A DNA stretch of 64,000 bases from the IMG/VR virus record IMGVR_UViG_3300044213_000107, positions 62,001 through 126,000 of that record; one strand, given 5' to 3'. Below the pieces are notes generated by a model. The model had not been told where the DNA came from. It saw only the letters and a program-made list of their open reading frames with translations, and searched no databases. Numbering within the stretch: position 1 is the first letter of the stretch; every line of letters starts with the position of its first letter. A program made the position numbers and the translations under genes. Below are positions 1-56,620 of the stretch, one piece after another.

Positions 1-2377
1 TACTTTCCAATCTAGTCTGCATATTCGGAAAACTATTTGGATAAAATGCATTGTAAGAATTAAGGCCATACAGGTACGGGTTATTCTTCATAAAGATTTC
101 TAATCCCGGTCCCATGTCGTTTATGCTTTGATCGTCTATAACATTAACATAAACAACTTCGTATTTTACATTAAAGTTAGCATCAACAGCTCGTGCTACA
201 TTTATATCTCCAAAGTTGATTCGTTTGTTATAATGATTTTTTTGTATAGCATCGATAAATGTTGCAGCAGTACTAGGATGCAATCCTGCTAAAAATAAAA
301 ACTTAATTTCTTTTGCAATACCAAACCAAGGATCATCTGGACGATATATTAACTCTCTAGGGAAAATATCATTGTCTGTAACAATATTTTGAAATTGTTG
401 ACGTTGGTCAGCAGTAGTTAGTGCTTTTAAATAAACATTTTCGTAAGGACCCAGATTGTAATTTTGTACTGTTAAGGTAAAATTATTTGTAGTAGATATT
501 GCACCATCTGCGGTAACCGCCTGCACGCCAAATCGATATGTGTTATCAAATGTAGTCGCACCACCATCTATTGTGGTACTTTGAGAATTGGAAACAACTG
601 TTACTGTATACTGATTGCCGTTGGTGTTGCTTATTACTAATTCTGTACCTTGAGCCACAAAAATACTTGGACTAACAACAATAATGTCATTGACTTGATC
701 AATAGCAATAATAGTACATCCAGATGCAACACCAGGGCCAGTGACCGACATGCCATTAGATAAATTTAAAACAGAACTTACTGTAATTTTTGCCGAAGTA
801 CTGTCTAAACTGAAGTATTCAAAACTAGCACGACCAACAAGTCTTCCCGAAGGTAATAGTTTTATGCCATTAGGTAATCTTGCGTAAGGTTCATCAATTA
901 ATGAATAAACTAAATTAGTTTCGCCATTACTGCGTACTGCACTCACTGATAATTCACTAACTGCACCATTTTGTATAGTTCCAATGTTGGCAGGAGAAGT
1001 CCATGTAACTATATCGTTGGCATTCTTGAAAACCGTGATTGAAAAATTCTTTGGCAAACTGCTATAATTTTTATTATATGTAATAGGTTGGTTAGGAGTT
1101 ATATGTACAGGACTGTTTACTTCGATTACTTCGTATTGACTGGTATTTAAAATGTCATTTTTATAAAATGCAATAGCATTAACTGGGGGAGTAATACCAG
1201 TTAGTAAATCGCCCACTGACAAATTACTAGGAATTCTAGAAACTAAAATGTTTGCATTTGAAGTAGTAATATTTGCGGTAATAAAACTATATTCTACAGT
1301 TTTGCTAGCAACTACACTAAAGTCATAAGATTTTTGTGTTTCAGTTTGACTTGGTAGTATCCCAGTTAACCAACCTGTGTTAGGATTGATGCTTACATTG
1401 GCAGGTAAACTCTGGAGTCCTTGGTCAAATTTATAAACTACACCATTTGTATCTGTATAGTCAAATGGTATTTGGTCAAACCCGTAGACATCCTGCACCA
1501 ATAATTCCCATGTTAGTGGATAACCTTCGATGTCATATCCTTGGAACTTATATGCAAAATTGCTATTCTGTACTAGATTTGGTATTGCGGCAGGATTACT
1601 TGTAATAATCGGTACATAAACATTGTCGGTATCAACTGGTATGTAGGTGTTATTGACATTTGTTAGATTATTATCAGCACTAAATCTTGCCTTGCTAATA
1701 ATCCATATTTTTACATCTTTGGTTGTGTAGTTGTTGCCATCAAATAACTGTACAGTAAAATTAAAATATTTGTCTACGCTCAATTGAACTGGGTCGTACT
1801 GTGTTATATCGCTAAGATTTGTGTCAAACCCATCACTGTTAATTGTGCTTGCTATTGGATCTGCATACCCAGATAATACCCCATCTGAACTAAGACTTAG
1901 CCCCGGCGGTAGTTCTCCTGCGGCCACAGACCAAACTAATACAGCGTTTGAGTTTGTCTGACTGCTGTTAAATTTATATTCAATATAAGTGCCGTCAAAA
2001 TATGCACCAACAAAGTCATTTGGCACAATTATTTCAACCGCGTTAATATTTGATACACTTAGTGTAAATGATCTGTCAGCAACTGCACCGTTGGTATCTG
2101 TAGCACGTATTGTAAACACATACTTAACTGTTGTTTCTGTACTACGATTAATAACAGGGACACCTTGTAGTGTACCAGCCGGTATTATTACTGTTCCTGT
2201 GCCGTTAACAACATCACGTTGTATTATTTCAATACCTGGTGGCAAGCTACCACTTAAAAATGAATATACTACTGGCGAACCACTGTTGCTGACCGCATAC
2301 AGTTGAAACCTATAAAATTGTGTTTCTGGTATAGTTCCTAAACTTCCAGAATTGGTATACCAGGTAATATAACTCAT
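1..2377 (-). CDS. Large virion structural protein, probably baseplate-associated, with Ig-like/cadherin-like repeats; 3' end runs off the window
   Basis: Absent from the ORF track because it is truncated. Starts at ATG 2377 (TAATG overlap with the tail-fibre stop) with MSYITWYTNSGSLGTIPETQFYRFQL; contains LPPGIEI and LPPGLSLSSDGV repeats. The same frame is open at the window start (YPNSFPNMQTRLES); the middle was not translated codon by codon. Confidence 0.7.
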   Translation of the reverse strand, partial: MSYITWYTNSGSLGTIPETQFYRFQLYAVSNSGSPVVYSFLSGSLPPGIEIIQRDVVNGTGTVIIPAGTLQGVPVINRSTETTVKYVFTIRATDTNGAVADRSFTLSVSNINAVEIIVPNDFVGAYFDGTYIEYKFNSSQTNSNAVLVWSVAAGELPPGLSLSSDGVLSGYADPIASTINSDGFDTNLSDITQYDPVQLSVDKYFNFTVQLFDGNNYTTKDVKIWIISKARFSADNNLTNVNNTYIPVDTDNVYVPIITSNPAAIPNLVQNSNFAYKFQGYDIEGYPLTWELLVQDVYGFDQIPFDYTDTNGVVYKFDQGLQSLPANVSINPNTGWLTGILPSQTETQKSYDFSVVASKTVEYSFITANITTSNANILVSRIPSNLSVGDLLTGITPPVNAIAFYKNDILNTSQYEVIEVNSPVHITPNQPITYNKNYSSLPKNFSITVFKNANDIVTWTSPANIGTIQNGAVSELSVSAVRSNGETNLVYSLIDEPYARLPNGIKLLPSGRLVGRASFEYFSLDSTSAKITVSSVLNLSNGMSVTGPGVASGCTIIAIDQVNDIIVVSPSIFVAQGTELVISNTNGNQYTVTVVSNSQSTTIDGGATTFDNTYRFGVQAVTADGAISTTNNFTLTVQNYNLGPYENVYLKALTTADQRQQFQNIVTDNDIFPRELIYRPDDPWFGIAKEIKFLFLAGLHPSTAATFIDAIQKNHYNKRINFGDINVARAVDANFNVKYEVVYVNVIDDQSINDMGPGLEIFMKNNPYLYGLNSYNAFYPNSFPNMQTRLES

Positions 2378-52468: not shown

Positions 52469-53194
52469 TTATTGCATATTAGCAATGATAAATTCTGCTT
52501 CGGGAATTCTAGTATGACCGTTTTGACTACCGAGTACCACAACCCGGCGAATACCACGGTCAGTTTTTACAGTTAGTATAATACAACCACCAGCGGCATG
52601 TGTGGTTCCGGTTTTGCTTACAATAAATTCGTAGGTTTTTCCAATTAATGGATTTGTATTTTTGAATATTAAATATTTTTTTCGAAGCTGTATTTCTACT
52701 TTTGTTTGTTTTGCCGCACTAACTATTAACGGATATTGTTCTGCTTGATTTAATAACTTCAGTAAGTCGTTTGCTGTACTTGTATTTTCTGCGTTTAACC
52801 CAGATGCGTCGGCATAGGTAGTATTGTTCATGCCAAATTCACGAGCATACATATTCATGTCTGCAACACACCCTGCATAACTTCGTGTATAGTTTTTACA
52901 TAACATATCAGCGGCATGATTGTCACTGTGCACAAGAGTTAGGTAAATTAACTCCTGCCGTGTTAAACGTAGTTGTCGATTGTATTGAAATGTTTGATCT
53001 AGTGGTTGATTTGCTCGTAATACTGCAATAACTGTCATTACCTTTGTAACACTAGCAATTGACAATACTTCATCTCTGTTTTTACCATCCAATATTACGT
53101 TGTCTTGATCAGCAATCAGCCAAGACTTGGCAGTTAGATCTTTGGCCGACACTGCGCAACTTAGAAAAAATAACAAATATATTAGGTACCGCAT
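52469..53194 (-). CDS. D-alanyl-D-alanine carboxypeptidase/endopeptidase (peptidase S11)
   Basis: SVTK (SxxK), SDN (SxN) and KTG motifs; signal peptide; promoter TTGATA-17-TATAAT at 53201-53229. Confidence 0.92.
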   Translation of the reverse strand: MRYLIYLLFFLSCAVSAKDLTAKSWLIADQDNVILDGKNRDEVLSIASVTKVMTVIAVLRANQPLDQTFQYNRQLRLTRQELIYLTLVHSDNHAADMLCKNYTRSYAGCVADMNMYAREFGMNNTTYADASGLNAENTSTANDLLKLLNQAEQYPLIVSAAKQTKVEIQLRKKYLIFKNTNPLIGKTYEFIVSKTGTTHAAGGCIILTVKTDRGIRRVVVLGSQNGHTRIPEAEFIIANMQ

Positions 53195-53211
53195 GTGCGT
53201 ATTATAACAGA

Positions 53212-54222
53212 TTACTTTGTACTTATCAAGTTATTTTCAAAGATTTCCCAGGCTCTTTGCCAAGTCCAACGTTGACTGCCTGCATGTACCTGTGTTCGGT
53301 CCATTTCTAGACATTTCTCAACTGCCACAGACAAACTCTCACAATCTGGATCTACCATGAATCCGGTTACGCCTTGGTCAACCACATCTGCTGGACCTTG
53401 GCATCGGTAGGCTGCCACCGGAGTACCGCAGGCCATGGCTTCAATCATCACAATACCAAATGTCTCCCATCGACTGGGAAATACAAATACTTCGGCATTG
53501 GCATAGTACTCAGCCAACTCTATGCCGGTTTTGAATCCAGTGAAATGCACTTCAGGATATCGTTTTTTGTAGGTTTCCAACATGGGCCCGTCGCCTACCA
53601 TGATTTTGAGATATCCTGGATAGTCCAACTGAAAAAAATCTTCCAGATTCTTTTCCTTGCTTACTCTGCTAACACACAACAGATATTTTCCTGGAAGATT
53701 TTTTCTAAGCTCAGGATCAAATATAGTTCGATCAACACCGCGAGTCCAGGGTATGATTTCACCATCAAAGCCGTGTGCACGCAGTTCTTTGACCATGCTG
53801 TCTGTGGTGGTCAAGACCTTGCCCGAGTGCTTGTGGAACCAGCGCACAAAACGCCAGGTGATCCATTCAGGAACGCCCAAGATCTTTTTCAACCCTTCAG
53901 GAAACTTAGTATGATAAGCGGTATTGTGCCTAACACCAACCAGTGATAGATATGCTCGAGCCCACAGACCCAAAGGACCTTCTGTTTGGATGTGTATATA
54001 ATCCGGAGCAATCTCCTCGATCTTCTCCCCAATATTGCTAGGCCAGGCCAATTTGACTTCGTTGTAGCCAGGGCAATCAATATAGCTGAAGCACCCGGGG
54101 TGCAGATTATGAACAATATAACCATCCCGTAACGCAAGCGCCTCAATATTTTTGTAAGTAGTAACGACACCATTTATTTGGTCAGGAAGATTATCCCCGA
54201 TCATTAGTATTTTCTTTGACAA
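53212..54222 (-). CDS. Glycosyltransferase family 4
   Basis: DNLPDQINGV, TEGP.G, VSRVSKEKN and ETFGIVMIEAMACGTPV; TTG start inside the endonuclease gene. Confidence 0.92.
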   Translation of the reverse strand: MSKKILMIGDNLPDQINGVVTTYKNIEALALRDGYIVHNLHPGCFSYIDCPGYNEVKLAWPSNIGEKIEEIAPDYIHIQTEGPLGLWARAYLSLVGVRHNTAYHTKFPEGLKKILGVPEWITWRFVRWFHKHSGKVLTTTDSMVKELRAHGFDGEIIPWTRGVDRTIFDPELRKNLPGKYLLCVSRVSKEKNLEDFFQLDYPGYLKIMVGDGPMLETYKKRYPEVHFTGFKTGIELAEYYANAEVFVFPSRWETFGIVMIEAMACGTPVAAYRCQGPADVVDQGVTGFMVDPDCESLSVAVEKCLEMDRTQVHAGSQRWTWQRAWEIFENNLISTK

Positions 54223-54832
54223 CTTTCCATCCTTTATGAATCATGACATCTCCTTTAACTAAATGCCGAACTGCTTTTGGTCTCAAATTATATTTTGTAG
54301 CAAATTCTAATTTAGATCCAGAGAATCTATTACCGTCTTTATGTTCAAACACATGAGAGGTTGGGTCATAATTGGGATTATTCATTCCGCTTTGATTTGG
54401 TCGATTATTTCTAAACTCTGAGTCTTGCCATAATTTCAATGAATTTTCTCTTTGTTTCTGTTTGTATTTCAATGAACTATATGTTGTTTTTCTTGCTTCT
54501 CGAATCTTATCCTTATATCCCGGTTGTAACCATAATTCCTTCATCCATTCCGTTGTATTACCATTACCTTCTTCGGGTTTAAGATTAGCCCACTCTCTTG
54601 AATTTACAATATTCCATAAATCACTATAATGTTTACCCCAATAAATCATTTCATCTCTACTTACACATTCTTTAATAACTTCAGTTGTTACATCATATCC
54701 GTGAACTTTGAGATGTTTTTTCCAATATTTGCCAGACCCAGGGTACTTGTTATAATCTTGTCTTGTAGTCTGACAGAGATATTTTAATCCTGTTTTATTG
54801 TGTGTTTTAACCAGCAGATAAATTGTTTTCAT
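54191..54832 (-). mobile_element. Free-standing GIY-YIG-like (Seg-type) homing endonuclease
   Basis: IYLLVKTHNKTGLKYLCQT...YPGSG..W; C-terminal NUMOD-like NNPNY...F..KY.L; own TAAATA promoter. Confidence 0.8.
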
Positions 54833-54858
54833 ATCTTTATTTATGCTAGACCGGACTC

Positions 54859-54915
54859 TCAGTGGCTAATACATGGCTCCGGCAGATTATCTGTGATGAT
54901 TAGAATTGTTTTCAT
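54859..54915 (-). pseudogene. Orphaned original 5' end of the GT4 gene (MKTILIITDNLPE)
   Basis: Matches the GT4 N-terminus MSKKILMIGDNLPD on the other side of the endonuclease. Confidence 0.7.
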
Positions 54916-54987
54916 TGATTGTTTCTTTCAGTGTCAATAGTAGAGTTAGTCCCACCCATAGTACGTACATGATAACTATAAAGTATT

Positions 54988-55875
54988 TCATTCGTTCATC
55001 CTAAATCTTATGTATTCTGTTAATTTGTCAGCTACATCAATTTCGCAATATTTTTCAAATCCACCAAAACCTGGATTACTATTTGCTTCACAAACAACAA
55101 AACCATTTTCTCCAAATAGTAAATCAACTCCAGCAATGTTTAATCCTAGTACTCGTGCAGTTTCAATGGCCAGGTACTCAATTTCTGGTGTGACTTCAAA
55201 ATTAGCACCTGTACCACCTCCGGTAATATTTGCACGAAAATCACCTTCAGGAGCTGTACGCTTCATGGCACCCAATACCCGCCCGCCAATTACAAACACA
55301 CGCAGATCTTCTCCTGGCCTAGCACTCATATACTCCTGTACAATCATTGTTTTTTTAGCGCCAAGCGTATCAATAAATTCCATTAATTTTTTATAATCTC
55401 TTTTACGTTCGCATAGATATACGCCTTCGCCGTAGCTGCCGGTGACCAATTTTACCACACAAGGAAATCCTATGTGTTGTTCAACTAGGCCGTCATCAAT
55501 AGGATAGCGTACCATCATGGTCTTGGGAATCGGTATGTTACTTGCGGCCAACCGTTGTCCTGTTCTTAATTTGTCACGAACTATATTAATGCTTACACTC
55601 GGATTAACGCACGGAACGCCCATTTGCTCAAATTGTCTAATAATTGCTAACTGAAATGGTAAAATACCAGCACCCAATCTTACTAAAACTAGATTTGGTG
55701 TTGGTAAGTCTTGCCCTTTGTATTTTACAGATTCTTGAAGATTTTTGCTGACTACAATGTCAAAGTCGTCAGGATGTGCAACTGTTGTGGTTATTCCTTT
55801 GCTGGAAAAACTATCTACTAGCCTGCTGGTTTCGTATTCATTACGTTCTTGTTTTGATATTATCAATACTGTCAT
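54988..55875 (-). CDS. rimK: RimK family ATP-grasp alpha-L-glutamate ligase
   Basis: RDKL, IPKT, PCVVK..GSYGEGV, VQEY, DLRVFVIG, FRAN, AGVD and EANSNPG motifs. Confidence 0.9.
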   Translation of the reverse strand: MTVLIISKQERNEYETSRLVDSFSSKGITTTVAHPDDFDIVVSKNLQESVKYKGQDLPTPNLVLVRLGAGILPFQLAIIRQFEQMGVPCVNPSVSINIVRDKLRTGQRLAASNIPIPKTMMVRYPIDDGLVEQHIGFPCVVKLVTGSYGEGVYLCERKRDYKKLMEFIDTLGAKKTMIVQEYMSARPGEDLRVFVIGGRVLGAMKRTAPEGDFRANITGGGTGANFEVTPEIEYLAIETARVLGLNIAGVDLLFGENGFVVCEANSNPGFGGFEKYCEIDVADKLTEYIRFRMNE

Positions 55876-56620
55876 TTGATTGTGTCCATGTTACTATTTC
55901 CCAGGTGCCGTTATGATGTTCAACCAAAGCAGTACACGACTCGACCCAGTCACCATCGTTCATATAAGTTATATCATCTATGTATTTAATCTCAGCATGA
56001 TGTATGTGTCCGCAGATAACACCGTCATATCCACGCTTTTTACAATAATTTGCAATTGTAACTTCAAATTTAAACATAAAGTCTATGGCTTTTTTGACTC
56101 TGTGTTTAAGGTATTTGCTAAGGCTCCAGTAACCGAACCCCAAACGATGGCGGATCCAATTAAATCTGCTATTGACACCAAGAATGAAATCATATGCTTT
56201 ATCTCCAAGAAAACTCAACCACGGTGCCAATCTTGTAATACCATCAAACATATCTCCGTGCACCACAAGATAATGTCGGCGATCCACCCCAATGTGTTCT
56301 GTTTGATTGCATATCTCTACACTGCCAAACGTGGCGGCATAAGGCATCATTGGTCGTAAAAATTCATCGTGATTACCAGCTATGTAAACAACTCGTGTAC
56401 CACGTTTGGCATGACCCAATATACGGCGAATCACATTAGTATGGCTTTGCTTCCATCGAAGTTTGTTTTGTTGTATCTTCCAAGCATCAATTATATCTCC
56501 TACTAGATATAAAGTTTCGCAAGTATTGTGTTTAAGAAAATTGTTTAATTGCTCGGCCTTACAATCTTTTGTGCCAAGATGTACATCACTGACAAAGATA
56601 CTACGATAGGTTTTTTGCAT
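55841..56620 (-). CDS. UDP-2,3-diacylglucosamine diphosphatase-like (LpxH-like) metallophosphoesterase
   Basis: SDVHLG, GDIID, GNHD, HGD, GHIHH and NDGDWVES motifs. Confidence 0.88.
   Translation of the reverse strand: MQKTYRSIFVSDVHLGTKDCKAEQLNNFLKHNTCETLYLVGDIIDAWKIQQNKLRWKQSHTNVIRRILGHAKRGTRVVYIAGNHDEFLRPMMPYAATFGSVEICNQTEHIGVDRRHYLVVHGDMFDGITRLAPWLSFLGDKAYDFILGVNSRFNWIRHRLGFGYWSLSKYLKHRVKKAIDFMFKFEVTIANYCKKRGYDGVICGHIHHAEIKYIDDITYMNDGDWVESCTALVEHHNGTWEIVTWTQSNDSIDNIKTRT

What the first reader, a model, noticed from the sequence alone, without database searches (positions are those of the whole stretch)
54170..54920. Homing endonuclease inserted into a glycosyltransferase 5' end and rebuilt it from its own 3' end
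Seen: upstream of the GIY-YIG-like gene lies a stub MKTILIITDNLPE-PCISH-stop. Downstream, the endonuclease's last codons encode TTG-SKKILMIGDNLPDQINGV in another frame, with an AAGGA RBS, restoring the GT4 N-terminus. GATAATCT(G/T)CC(G/T)GA is duplicated at both borders. The insert carries its own TAAATA promoter, and no group I intron core is apparent. Inference: an intron-less invasion was neutralised by overprinting a replacement N-terminus.
Basis: partly seen in the sequence, partly recalled or inferred. Interest (0 to 1): 0.65.

Follow-up and report, generated by a model that had tools for sequence, protein, structure and literature searches.

The report
Homing endonuclease cassette replacing a gene start
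In a T4-like freshwater phage, a selfish homing-endonuclease gene sits inside the first codons of a sugar-transferase gene and carries its own spare copy of those codons, leaving the original 13-codon start behind as a fossil; this mirrors a trick known from fungal mitochondria and is instructive rather than revolutionary.

Summary
On the minus strand, a 13-codon stub of the GT4 gene (54915..54877) lies in its ancestral context. It is followed by a 213-aa endonuclease ORF (54832..54191) and a complete GT4 gene (54222..53212). The endonuclease has no Pfam hit, but its model matches the I-TevI GIY-YIG domain (Z 10.5) and an I-HmuI-like DNA-binding tail.

Seventy-seven endonuclease-free relatives have one uninterrupted GT4 with the stub's N-terminus. 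Thirteen distinct loci carry orthologues of this endonuclease, always at this site and always with a rebuilt GT4 5' end.

The rebuilt end is not a new invention. It is a diverged GT4-derived copy that travels with the cassette. Only the Shine-Dalgarno motif and the TTG start lie in native endonuclease codons.

The window holds two nested stubs: an intact outer one and a decayed inner one shared with the relatives. An unrelated GIY-YIG endonuclease in another phage broke the same gene at codon 12-13.

No intron or intein is present. Independent metagenome runs confirm the arrangement.

The best explanation is one-sided homing with an illegitimate left junction. This is a 5'-end, phage version of the endonuclease-borne C-terminal replacements known from fungal mitochondria, so a new variant of a known kind.

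The parts
54887..54991 (-). Small membrane-protein ORF (34 aa). This is the ancestral upstream neighbour of GT4. Its last codons overlap the stub and it stops at the TAA in GAT-AAT.
   Evidence: 62-65% identical ORFs directly precede and overlap the uninterrupted GT4 in L008, L026 and L027.
54859..54915 (-). Outer stub: 13 native GT4 codons (54915..54877, MKTILIITDNLPE), then 5 out-of-context codons and a TGA (54861..54859).
   Evidence: 13/13 residues and 33/39 nt identical to the start of L017; 26/39 nt identical to the rebuilt copy.
54858..54874 (-). Inner, decayed stub: ATG plus a few bases (54874..54867), then a 9-nt remnant ending in GAG (54866..54858). It is homologous to the short stubs at the left end of the cassette in the other loci.
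   Evidence: 11 of the 12 other loci show ATG(or GTG)...TA followed by the GCCACAGAG-type remnant or a variant of it. L175 keeps a long stub of about 12 codons in its place.
54833..54857 (-). Conserved cassette linker with a late-promoter-like box, CATAAATA (54845..54838), 5 nt before the endonuclease ATG.
   Evidence: the linker is conserved in all 13 distinct loci, with an exact TATAAATA or GATAAATA in 10 of them. One search shows the genome-wide association of this motif with gene starts.
54191..54832 (-). Free-standing GIY-YIG homing endonuclease gene (213 aa). Residues 2-90 form the nuclease domain; residues 145-209 form the DNA-binding domain. The last ~7 codons are read from GT4-derived sequence.
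   Evidence: pLDDT 89.7. (I-TevI 1mk0, Z 10.5, rmsd 2.5 over 87 residues; I-HmuI 1u3e, Z 6.9). (family, NUMOD3 in homologues). (dN/dS 0.10-0.18). (tail length).
54230..54234 (-). AAGGA Shine-Dalgarno-like motif for the rebuilt GT4, encoded by the conserved K-G-W codons of the endonuclease, 7 nt before the TTG.
   Evidence: AAAGGNTGG in all 13 distinct loci. (AGGA upstream of 26% of genes against 3% at random).
54181..54222 (-). Cassette-borne replacement 5' end of GT4 (codons 1-14: TTG start, an ATG at codon 7 at 54204..54202). It overlaps the endonuclease ORF by 32 nt.
   Evidence: a start codon at the codon-1 position in all 13 distinct loci (TTG in 11, GTG in L088, ATG in L174). Closest to the rebuilt ends of L084 and L088.
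53212..54222 (-). Complete GT4 glycosyltransferase gene (336 aa).
   Evidence: Glycos_transf_1 1.7e-28, Glyco_transf_4 4e-12. (304 relatives, 70-78% identity among the 80 kept). (dN/dS 0.07-0.16).

Best explanation
The element is a free-standing GIY-YIG homing endonuclease cassette of a T4-like phage. Its home is the 5' coding end of a GT4 glycosyltransferase gene.

The cassette has three parts: a short linker with a late-promoter-like box, the endonuclease gene, and its own diverged copy of GT4 codons 1 to about 13. The Shine-Dalgarno motif and the TTG start of that copy lie in the endonuclease's last native codons. The endonuclease ORF then runs on into the copy and stops at the TAA within GAT-AAT.

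Proposed mechanism (inferred):
1. The enzyme cuts endonuclease-free GT4 alleles at or next to codon 13, just before the conserved Q-I-N-G-V codons.
2. The break is repaired from an endonuclease-bearing genome, with homology available on the GT4 side.
3. Genes upstream of GT4 differ between lineages, so the other side often lacks homology and is sealed by illegitimate, one-sided repair.
4. That keeps the recipient's own codons 1-13 as a stub in front of the incoming cassette.

The window records this twice. A decayed inner stub came in with the cassette, and an intact outer stub comes from the genome that had the small-ORF/RimK context. GT4 is then translated from the TTG, so the host gene survives.
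For: Shown:
- GIY-YIG fold plus a homing-endonuclease DNA-binding tail. The ORF is intact and under purifying selection.
- 77 endonuclease-free relatives have one uninterrupted GT4 whose N-terminus equals the stub.
- Orthologues of the endonuclease (55-74% identity) always lie directly upstream of GT4, in 13 distinct loci. They sit behind at least four different upstream genes.
- All 13 loci share the linker, a stub remnant and a rebuilt 5' end with a start codon at the codon-1 position.
- Endonuclease and GT4 similarities disagree. In L085, GT4 is 49-53% identical to the others while its endonuclease is 63-70% identical. The window's GT4 is nearest L020, but its endonuclease is nearest L083.
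- The stub matches endonuclease-free alleles best, and the rebuilt end matches endonuclease-bearing alleles best.
- L175 keeps a long stub of about 12 codons. The window's outer stub ends at the GAG of codon 13. An unrelated GIY-YIG endonuclease in L080/L081 (Pfam LEM-3_GIY-YIG, 3.4e-7) left a 12-codon stub and also rebuilt the start, with a GTG 7 nt after AAGGGAG.
- Independent runs hold the junctions.
- The genome uses Shine-Dalgarno sites.

Established knowledge: one-sided homing with illegitimate junctions at microhomology, and host-gene expression signals embedded in seg/mob genes, are documented for T4 (PMC2988022).
Against: - No cleavage data exist, so the cut site is inferred only from where the stubs end.
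- No close donor or recipient is available. The nearest GT4 is 77% identical at DNA level, so no co-conversion tract could be traced and the direction of the exchange is undetermined.
- L176 shares the window's small-ORF context but has only a short stub. The outer stub could therefore be old and preserved by its overlap with the small ORF, rather than recent.
- The inner stub is only 17 nt.
- Use of the TTG start rests on conservation, not on protein data. 9 of the 13 distinct loci also have an ATG at codon 7, which gene callers prefer.
- The promoter-like box is only 5 nt from the endonuclease ATG.
Confidence: 0.72

Rival explanations
1. There was a single ancient invasion and only vertical descent afterwards. 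The window-type structure (long stub plus extra bases) is ancestral, every shorter stub is a deletion derivative, and the endonuclease is now a resident or domesticated gene rather than a mobile one.
For: - Removing 41 nt from the window's structure reproduces the L176 junction exactly.
- L175 shows that long stubs can persist.
- The window's GT4 and L020's GT4 are sisters and both carry the endonuclease.
- The endonuclease is under purifying selection.
Against: - Endonuclease-bearing GT4 alleles are scattered among 77 endonuclease-free ones.
- Endonuclease and GT4 divergences are discordant.
- The cassette lies behind at least four different upstream genes.
- The window's inner remnant has the same ATG...TA plus GAG-ending layout as the short stubs elsewhere. 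The window therefore holds two stubs, which one invasion does not produce.
Confidence: 0.17
2. The insert is a group I intron or an intein, so the stub is exon or extein 1 and is joined to the rest of GT4 after splicing.
For: HEGs in T4-like phages often live in introns. The stub ends exactly where the downstream copy could continue in frame (codon 13 to codon 14).
Against: - No Rfam family matches 52500..56500, even at E up to 1.
- Only 44 nt of the insert lie outside the endonuclease ORF, which is too little for an intron core.
- The flanks show no stable RNA fold (z between -1.1 and +1.1).
- The endonuclease is in a different frame from the stub, with stops between them, so it is not an intein.
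- A complete, conserved second copy of codons 1-13 with its own start and ribosome-binding site would be pointless in an intron.
Confidence: 0.03
3. The arrangement is an assembly chimera between two strains, one with and one without the endonuclease.
For: The record is a metagenome assembly, and related strains co-occur. A loose end in run X5 at 54180 continues into an uninterrupted-type 5' end.
Against: - Contigs from runs of two other studies span both junctions with no mismatch: X2 covers 54070..54913 and X3 covers 54482..55120.
- Analogous stub-plus-rebuilt structures occur in independent assemblies (L175, L080/L081).
Confidence: 0.02

Closest known systems
Mobile endonuclease ORFs (mORFs) of fungal mitochondria that carry a foreign gene terminus: Allomyces macrogynus atp6; Glomus atp6, atp9, cox2 and nad3 (PMC3630166)
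   Same: An endonuclease ORF (LAGLIDADG or GIY-YIG) is inserted inside a coding region without an intron. The cassette brings a diverged copy of the gene's terminal codons, which replaces the native ones. The native terminus persists beside it as a remnant that is closer to relatives than the imported copy is.
   Different: There the 3' (C-terminal) end is replaced, often in frame with the endonuclease, in mitochondria. Here the 5' end is replaced in a T4-like phage. The cassette must therefore also supply a ribosome-binding site and a start codon, and these lie inside the endonuclease's own last codons. The window also shows nested stubs, and a second unrelated endonuclease uses the same codon.
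Free-standing Seg/Mob homing endonucleases of T4-like phages; intronless homing and one-sided illegitimate repair (PMC2988022)
   Same: This is a GIY-YIG enzyme with a modular DNA-binding tail in a T4-like genome (Gp23). Its distribution among relatives is patchy. Expression signals for the downstream host gene are embedded in the endonuclease ORF, as with segG and gene 32. A late-promoter-like box lies in front of the gene.
   Different: T4 seg and mob genes lie between genes, or split a gene into two functional halves (mobE/nrdA, mobA/gene 39-60). Here the insertion lies within the first 13 codons, the fragment is discarded, and the whole gene is restored by a duplicated 5' end. The nuclease domain belongs to a subfamily that Pfam does not recognise.
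Integrating elements that rebuild their target, such as prophages or islands in tRNA or protein-gene 3' ends (from general knowledge, not tested here)
   Same: The element carries a copy of the disrupted gene end, so the target gene stays intact after insertion.
   Different: Those elements use site-specific recombinases and near-identical attachment repeats at the 3' end. Here the driver is a double-strand-break endonuclease, the repeat is only 67% identical, and the 5' end is rebuilt.

Membership tests
GIY-YIG homing endonucleases (I-TevI / Seg type) | GIY-YIG alpha/beta nuclease fold in the N-terminal ~90 residues | tested here: met
   AlphaFold model with pLDDT 89.7. Residues 2-90 align to I-TevI 1mk0 with Z 10.5, rmsd 2.5 A over 87 residues. 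The next matches are PD-T4-3 (Z 6.3-6.5) and UvrC GIY-YIG domains (Z 4.6-4.9).
GIY-YIG homing endonucleases (I-TevI / Seg type) | Conserved motif residues (two Tyr motifs, Arg, His, Glu, Asn) | tested here: inconclusive
   Alignments A2 and A3 show Y5 (TIY), Y18 (KYL-C/G), R24, H40, E61 and N83 invariant or conserved in at least 90% of sequences. Their equivalence to I-TevI Y6, Y17, R27, H40, E75 and N90 is inferred from order and spacing, not from a residue-level superposition.
GIY-YIG homing endonucleases (I-TevI / Seg type) | Match to a curated GIY-YIG sequence model | tested here: not met
   No Pfam hit, even at E up to 10. No sequence hit in the PDB. Only 3 of 50 homologues touch SegE_GIY-YIG weakly (best E 0.0012). 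This is a divergent subfamily recognised by structure only.
GIY-YIG homing endonucleases (I-TevI / Seg type) | Separate C-terminal DNA-binding module (NUMOD / helix-turn-helix) | tested here: met
   Residues 145-209 align to the I-HmuI DNA-binding part (1u3e) with Z 6.9, and to the I-TevI DNA-binding domain (1i3j) with Z 3.6. Homologues that share the nuclease domain carry NUMOD3.
GIY-YIG homing endonucleases (I-TevI / Seg type) | Site-specific cleavage of the endonuclease-free allele, and homing | not testable with these tools
   Only indirect support is available: fixed genomic site, patchy distribution and discordant phylogenies.
Group I intron-encoded endonuclease | Intron ribozyme core flanking the ORF | tested here: not met
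   No Rfam match in 52500..56500. Only 44 nt are non-coding. No significant fold.
Intein | In-frame insertion in the host protein with splicing blocks | tested here: not met
   The stub, the endonuclease and GT4 are in different frames and are separated by stop codons.
Endonuclease cassettes that replace a gene terminus (Allomyces atp6 type) | The cassette carries a diverged copy of the terminal codons, and the native terminus is left as a remnant that is closer to relatives | tested here: met
   The stub best matches endonuclease-free L017 (33/39 nt). The rebuilt end best matches endonuclease-bearing L084 and L088 (33/39 and 32/39 nt). Stub and rebuilt end are 26/39 identical to each other.
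Endonuclease cassettes that replace a gene terminus (Allomyces atp6 type) | 3' (C-terminal) replacement in a mitochondrial gene | tested here: not met
   Here the 5' end of a phage gene is replaced.

The most novel reading that the evidence does not exclude
The conserved GT4 codons 12-14 may be a homing hotspot, used by at least two unrelated GIY-YIG endonuclease lineages. Each lineage would have evolved into a portable '5'-end replacement cassette': the ribosome-binding site and a non-ATG start lie inside the endonuclease's last codons, followed by a cleavage-immune copy of the target's first codons. Because the upstream genes differ between phages, homing would usually be one-sided. The nested stubs would then be an in-situ record of the cut position, so HEG target sites could be read directly from metagenomes.
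Probability: 0.4. Interest if true: 0.65.

Novelty: new variant of a known kind. Interest (0 to 1): 0.52.

Why it matters
- It shows how a double-strand-break endonuclease gene can live inside an open reading frame without an intron or intein and without killing the gene: it carries the gene's start with it. I know of no described 5'-end case in phages. The literature searches here were limited and turned up only the 3'-end mitochondrial analogue.
- The nested stubs, and the second unrelated endonuclease at the same codon, give a testable prediction of the cleavage site.
- They also look like a natural example of the one-sided, illegitimate homing that has been seen only in T4 laboratory crosses.
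- For annotation, such loci yield mis-called starts (gene callers chose the codon-7 ATG or a fused stub-endonuclease ORF). They also reveal a GIY-YIG subfamily that Pfam does not see.

Tried and rejected
- Sequence-based naming of the endonuclease failed. Pfam, PHROGs and PDB sequence searches gave nothing useful. Only the fold search worked.
- Single-protein locus searches for the endonuclease found nothing in viral contigs or metagenome contigs. An alignment query was needed.
- A sliding-window comparison of the window's GT4 with endonuclease-bearing and endonuclease-free alleles showed no co-conversion tract. All relatives are about 75-80% identical.
- A screen of 32 paralogous endonuclease loci for stub-like repeats of the downstream gene's start found none above shuffled controls. 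The method cannot see 5-6 codon stubs.
- RNA folding of both junctions was not significant. This includes a possible hairpin between the promoter-like box and the I-Y-L codons (best z -1.1, in L020).
- No RNA run holds the locus, so splicing, transcript starts and expression could not be examined.
- No joint that skips the endonuclease was seen in four DNA runs. These are contigs, so absence proves nothing.
- HEG1 and HEG2 show no detectable sequence relationship (hhalign probability 0.8%).
- A careful maximum-likelihood tree did not finish, so the quick tree was used.
- One script call was lost and was repeated.
Full report
**Setting.** The window is part of a 260.7-kb IMG/VR virus record, about 74% complete. 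The record encodes a T4-type major capsid protein (Pfam Gp23, E 2e-99), a DNA ligase, a tail fibre protein and radical-SAM proteins. GC content is 38.5%, and 204 of 228 crude ORFs lie on the minus strand. Shine-Dalgarno motifs are used: AGGA occurs upstream of 26% of starts against 3% at random positions. The genome is therefore a large T4-like phage from fresh water.

**The observation.** On the minus strand the gene order is as follows:
- LpxH-like phosphoesterase (56620..55841)
- RimK-type ATP-grasp protein (55875..54988)
- a 34-aa membrane ORF (54991..54887)
- a GT4 stub (ATG at 54915; 13 codons to 54877; five stray codons; TGA at 54861..54859)
- 26 further non-coding bases
- a 213-aa ORF (54832..54191)
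- a complete 336-aa GT4 gene that begins with TTG at 54222, inside the last 32 nt of the 213-aa ORF and 7 nt after AAGGA

The two 15-nt border repeats belong to a 39-nt duplication that is 26/39 identical.

The arrangement is not an assembly artefact. Contigs from runs of two other studies cover 54070..54913 and 54482..55120 without a mismatch.

**What the 213-aa ORF is.** Pfam, PHROGs and PDB sequence searches give nothing. The word search finds 358 homologues.
- About 15 full-length ones are 55-74% identical.
- Many others share only the N-terminal ~90 residues, at 60-69% identity, in front of different C-terminal parts. Some of these carry NUMOD3.

The AlphaFold model built with 50 homologues is confident (pLDDT 89.7). 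Its matches are:
- residues 2-90 on the I-TevI catalytic domain (Z 10.5, rmsd 2.5 A, 87 residues)
- other GIY-YIG nucleases next
- residues 145-209 on the DNA-binding part of I-HmuI (Z 6.9) and of I-TevI (Z 3.6)

The family consensus has the TIY...KYLG spacing of GIY-YIG and conserved R24, H40, E61 and N83. The ORF is under purifying selection (dN/dS 0.10-0.18, with dS saturated). It is a modular GIY-YIG homing endonuclease of a subfamily that curated sequence models miss.

**Relatives without the endonuclease.** Of the 80 related GT4 loci kept from viral contigs, 77 have no endonuclease. All 77 have a single uninterrupted gene whose N-terminus reads M-(T/S)-K-(T/K)-I-L-I-(I/V)-T-D-N-L-P-(D/E)-Q-I-N-G-V. 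The stub equals this: 13/13 residues and 33/39 nt match L017. It also sits behind the same small ORF that precedes the intact gene in L008, L026 and L027.

In these relatives the upstream gene overlaps the first ten GT4 codons in another frame and stops at the TAA inside GAT-AAT. This holds for the LpxH-like gene and for the small ORF. The 32-nt overlap and the stop of the endonuclease ORF in the window are therefore properties of GT4 5' sequence, not an invention of the endonuclease.

**Relatives with the endonuclease.** Orthologues always lie directly upstream of GT4. The 13 distinct loci are the window, L020, L083, L085, L088, L093, L172-L176, L177/178 and L179/180. They sit behind at least four different upstream genes.

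All share:
- a conserved linker ending in a (T/G)ATAAATA-like box 5-6 nt before the endonuclease ATG
- a remnant of the GT4 start to the left of the linker
- a rebuilt GT4 5' end to the right, with AAAGGNTGG (the K-G-W codons) 7 nt before a start codon at the codon-1 position: TTG in 11 loci, GTG in L088, ATG in L174

An ATG at codon 7 occurs in 9 of the 13 and in none of the 77 endonuclease-free alleles. It is missing in L172, L175, L176 and L177/178, whereas the codon-1 start is universal. The first beta-strand (K-I-L-I-I) would also be lost from codon 7. I therefore favour the TTG; this is an inference.

Paralogues at other sites end 3-7 residues after K-G-W, whereas the GT4-linked orthologues end 11-17 residues after it. 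So codons 1-3 of the rebuilt gene and its ribosome-binding site lie in native endonuclease codons. From about codon 4 the sequence is GT4-derived, and the endonuclease tail is what reads through it.

The window's rebuilt end is closest to those of other endonuclease-bearing loci (33/39 nt to L084, 32/39 to L088). The stub is closest to endonuclease-free alleles. This is the same native-versus-imported pattern as in the Allomyces and Glomus mitochondrial cases.

**Mobility.** Endonuclease-bearing GT4 alleles are scattered over the GT4 tree (quick tree). Pairwise identities are discordant:
- The L085 GT4 is 49-53% identical to the others, but its endonuclease is 63-70% identical.
- The window's GT4 is nearest L020 (80%), but its endonuclease is nearer L083 (73%) than L020 (68%).

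GT4 remains under purifying selection in endonuclease-bearing lineages (dN/dS about 0.16).

**Stubs as a record.** In most loci the left remnant is short: ATG, a few codons, then ...TA followed by a 9-nt block ending in GAG. L175 is the most divergent orthologue. It keeps about 12 GT4 codons running straight into the linker, so the short forms look like internal deletions of an originally 12-13-codon stub.

The window has both. An intact outer stub ends at the GAG of codon 13. Two bases follow, then a decayed inner stub of the common type (54874..54858), then the linker. The gene was therefore broken at the same place at least twice.

A third, independent case exists. In L080/L081 an unrelated 287-aa GIY-YIG endonuclease lies between a 12-codon stub and a rebuilt GT4.
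- Pfam assigns it to LEM-3_GIY-YIG at 3.4e-7, and it has no detectable similarity to the first family.
- It has its own GATAAATA box 21 nt upstream and AAAGGA 7 nt upstream of its ATG.
- The only start for its rebuilt GT4 is a GTG inside the endonuclease ORF, 7 nt after AAGGGAG.

Right after the common break point lie the invariant Q-I-N-G-V codons. A functionally constrained stretch like this is the kind of target homing endonucleases typically use (established knowledge).

**Mechanism proposed.** The enzyme cuts naive GT4 alleles near codon 13. Repair copies the cassette from an endonuclease-bearing co-infecting genome, using homology downstream in GT4. Because the upstream neighbours differ between lineages, the left side is often sealed without homology. 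That preserves the recipient's codons 1-13.

One-sided homing with illegitimate junctions is documented in T4, and so are host-gene expression signals embedded in seg and mob genes (PMC2988022). The steps that are shown and those that are inferred are listed under Best explanation. The direction and age of the window's second event cannot be fixed. L176 shares the small-ORF context but has only a short stub, and one 41-nt deletion would turn the window's structure into L176's.

**Promoter claim.** On the gene strand, (T/G)ATAAATA lies 16-40 nt before an ORF start in 16 of 35 cases, against about 3% for random positions. GATAAATA occurs 21 times on the gene strand and once on the other. This fits a T4-type late promoter.

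The cassette box is conserved, and it is an exact TATAAATA in L083 and L085. It lies only 5-6 nt from the endonuclease ATG, whereas exact TATAAATA boxes in this genome lie 19-40 nt from their starts. Its role is therefore open. In L083 and L085 the stub ATG is in frame with the endonuclease, which gives 229-233-aa fused ORFs.

**Rivals.**
- An intron is excluded as far as sequence allows: no Rfam hit, 44 nt of non-coding DNA and no stable fold.
- An intein is excluded by the reading frames and stops.
- A chimeric assembly is excluded by independent runs.
- A single ancient invasion followed only by deletions remains possible, but it fits the two stubs and the discordant trees poorly.

**Verdict.** This is a new 5'-end, phage variant of endonuclease-borne gene-terminus replacement. 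The evidence comes from comparing loci rather than from experiments, and interest is moderate.

Noticed in passing
L080:1194-2141 (also L081): An unrelated GIY-YIG endonuclease (287 aa, Pfam LEM-3_GIY-YIG) lies between a 12-codon GT4 stub (ORF 1194..1253) and a rebuilt GT4. The only start for that GT4 is a GTG at 2089, inside the endonuclease ORF, 7 nt after AAGGGAG. The endonuclease has its own GATAAATA box (1249..1256) and an AAAGGA motif.
   Followed up: partly
L002:473-1021 (-) = G000:C1:473-1021, outside the window: A second member of the same endonuclease family lies in this genome (182 aa, 45% identical over the nuclease domain). It is free-standing, with GATAAATA 16 nt and AGGAG a few nt before its ATG. 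It does not overlap its neighbours.
   Followed up: partly
whole genome G000; e.g. window minus-strand boxes listed: (T/G)ATAAATA is strand-specific (GATAAATA 21 against 1) and sits 16-40 nt upstream of many ORF starts, like T4 late promoters. The genome also encodes a T4 Gp23-type capsid protein.
   Followed up: partly
window 54191-56620 and loci L003-L082: The junction in front of GT4 is hypervariable among relatives. The upstream gene can be LpxH-like, RimK, a 34-aa membrane ORF, a ~60-aa ORF ending K-F-K-S-F-K-V-E-G, a ~50-aa ORF ending in a K-H-K-H-T motif, a desaturase-like ORF or a 250-280-aa ORF. The LpxH-like, membrane-ORF and K-F-K-S-F-K-V-E-G neighbours overlap the first GT4 codons in another frame.
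   Followed up: partly
window 55841-55880 (-): The first codons of RimK (MTVLIIS) and the overlapping LpxH tail resemble the GT4 start and the LpxH tail of relatives where LpxH abuts GT4 (about 14/21 nt by eye). This could be chance between two beta-strand starts, or a trace of the RimK module having entered at the GT4 start.
   Followed up: no
window 54139-54180, run X5: A contig of a co-occurring relative leaves the window at 54180 and continues into an uninterrupted-type 5' end (I-L-I-I-T-D-N-L-P-D). Possible target alleles therefore coexist with the endonuclease-bearing phage in the same lake samples.
   Followed up: no
L083:3001-3702, L085:3001-3690: In these loci the GT4 stub ATG is in frame with the endonuclease, which gives 233- and 229-aa ORFs. 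The endonuclease could there be translated from the original GT4 initiation signals. Gene callers also placed the GT4 start at the codon-7 ATG.
   Followed up: partly
L020:2800-2840; window 54810-54850 (-): The promoter-like box is complementary to the I-Y-L codons of the endonuclease, giving a possible hairpin with the ATG in the loop. This recalls the translational control of T4 endonucleases. It is not significant against shuffles (best z -1.1).
   Followed up: partly
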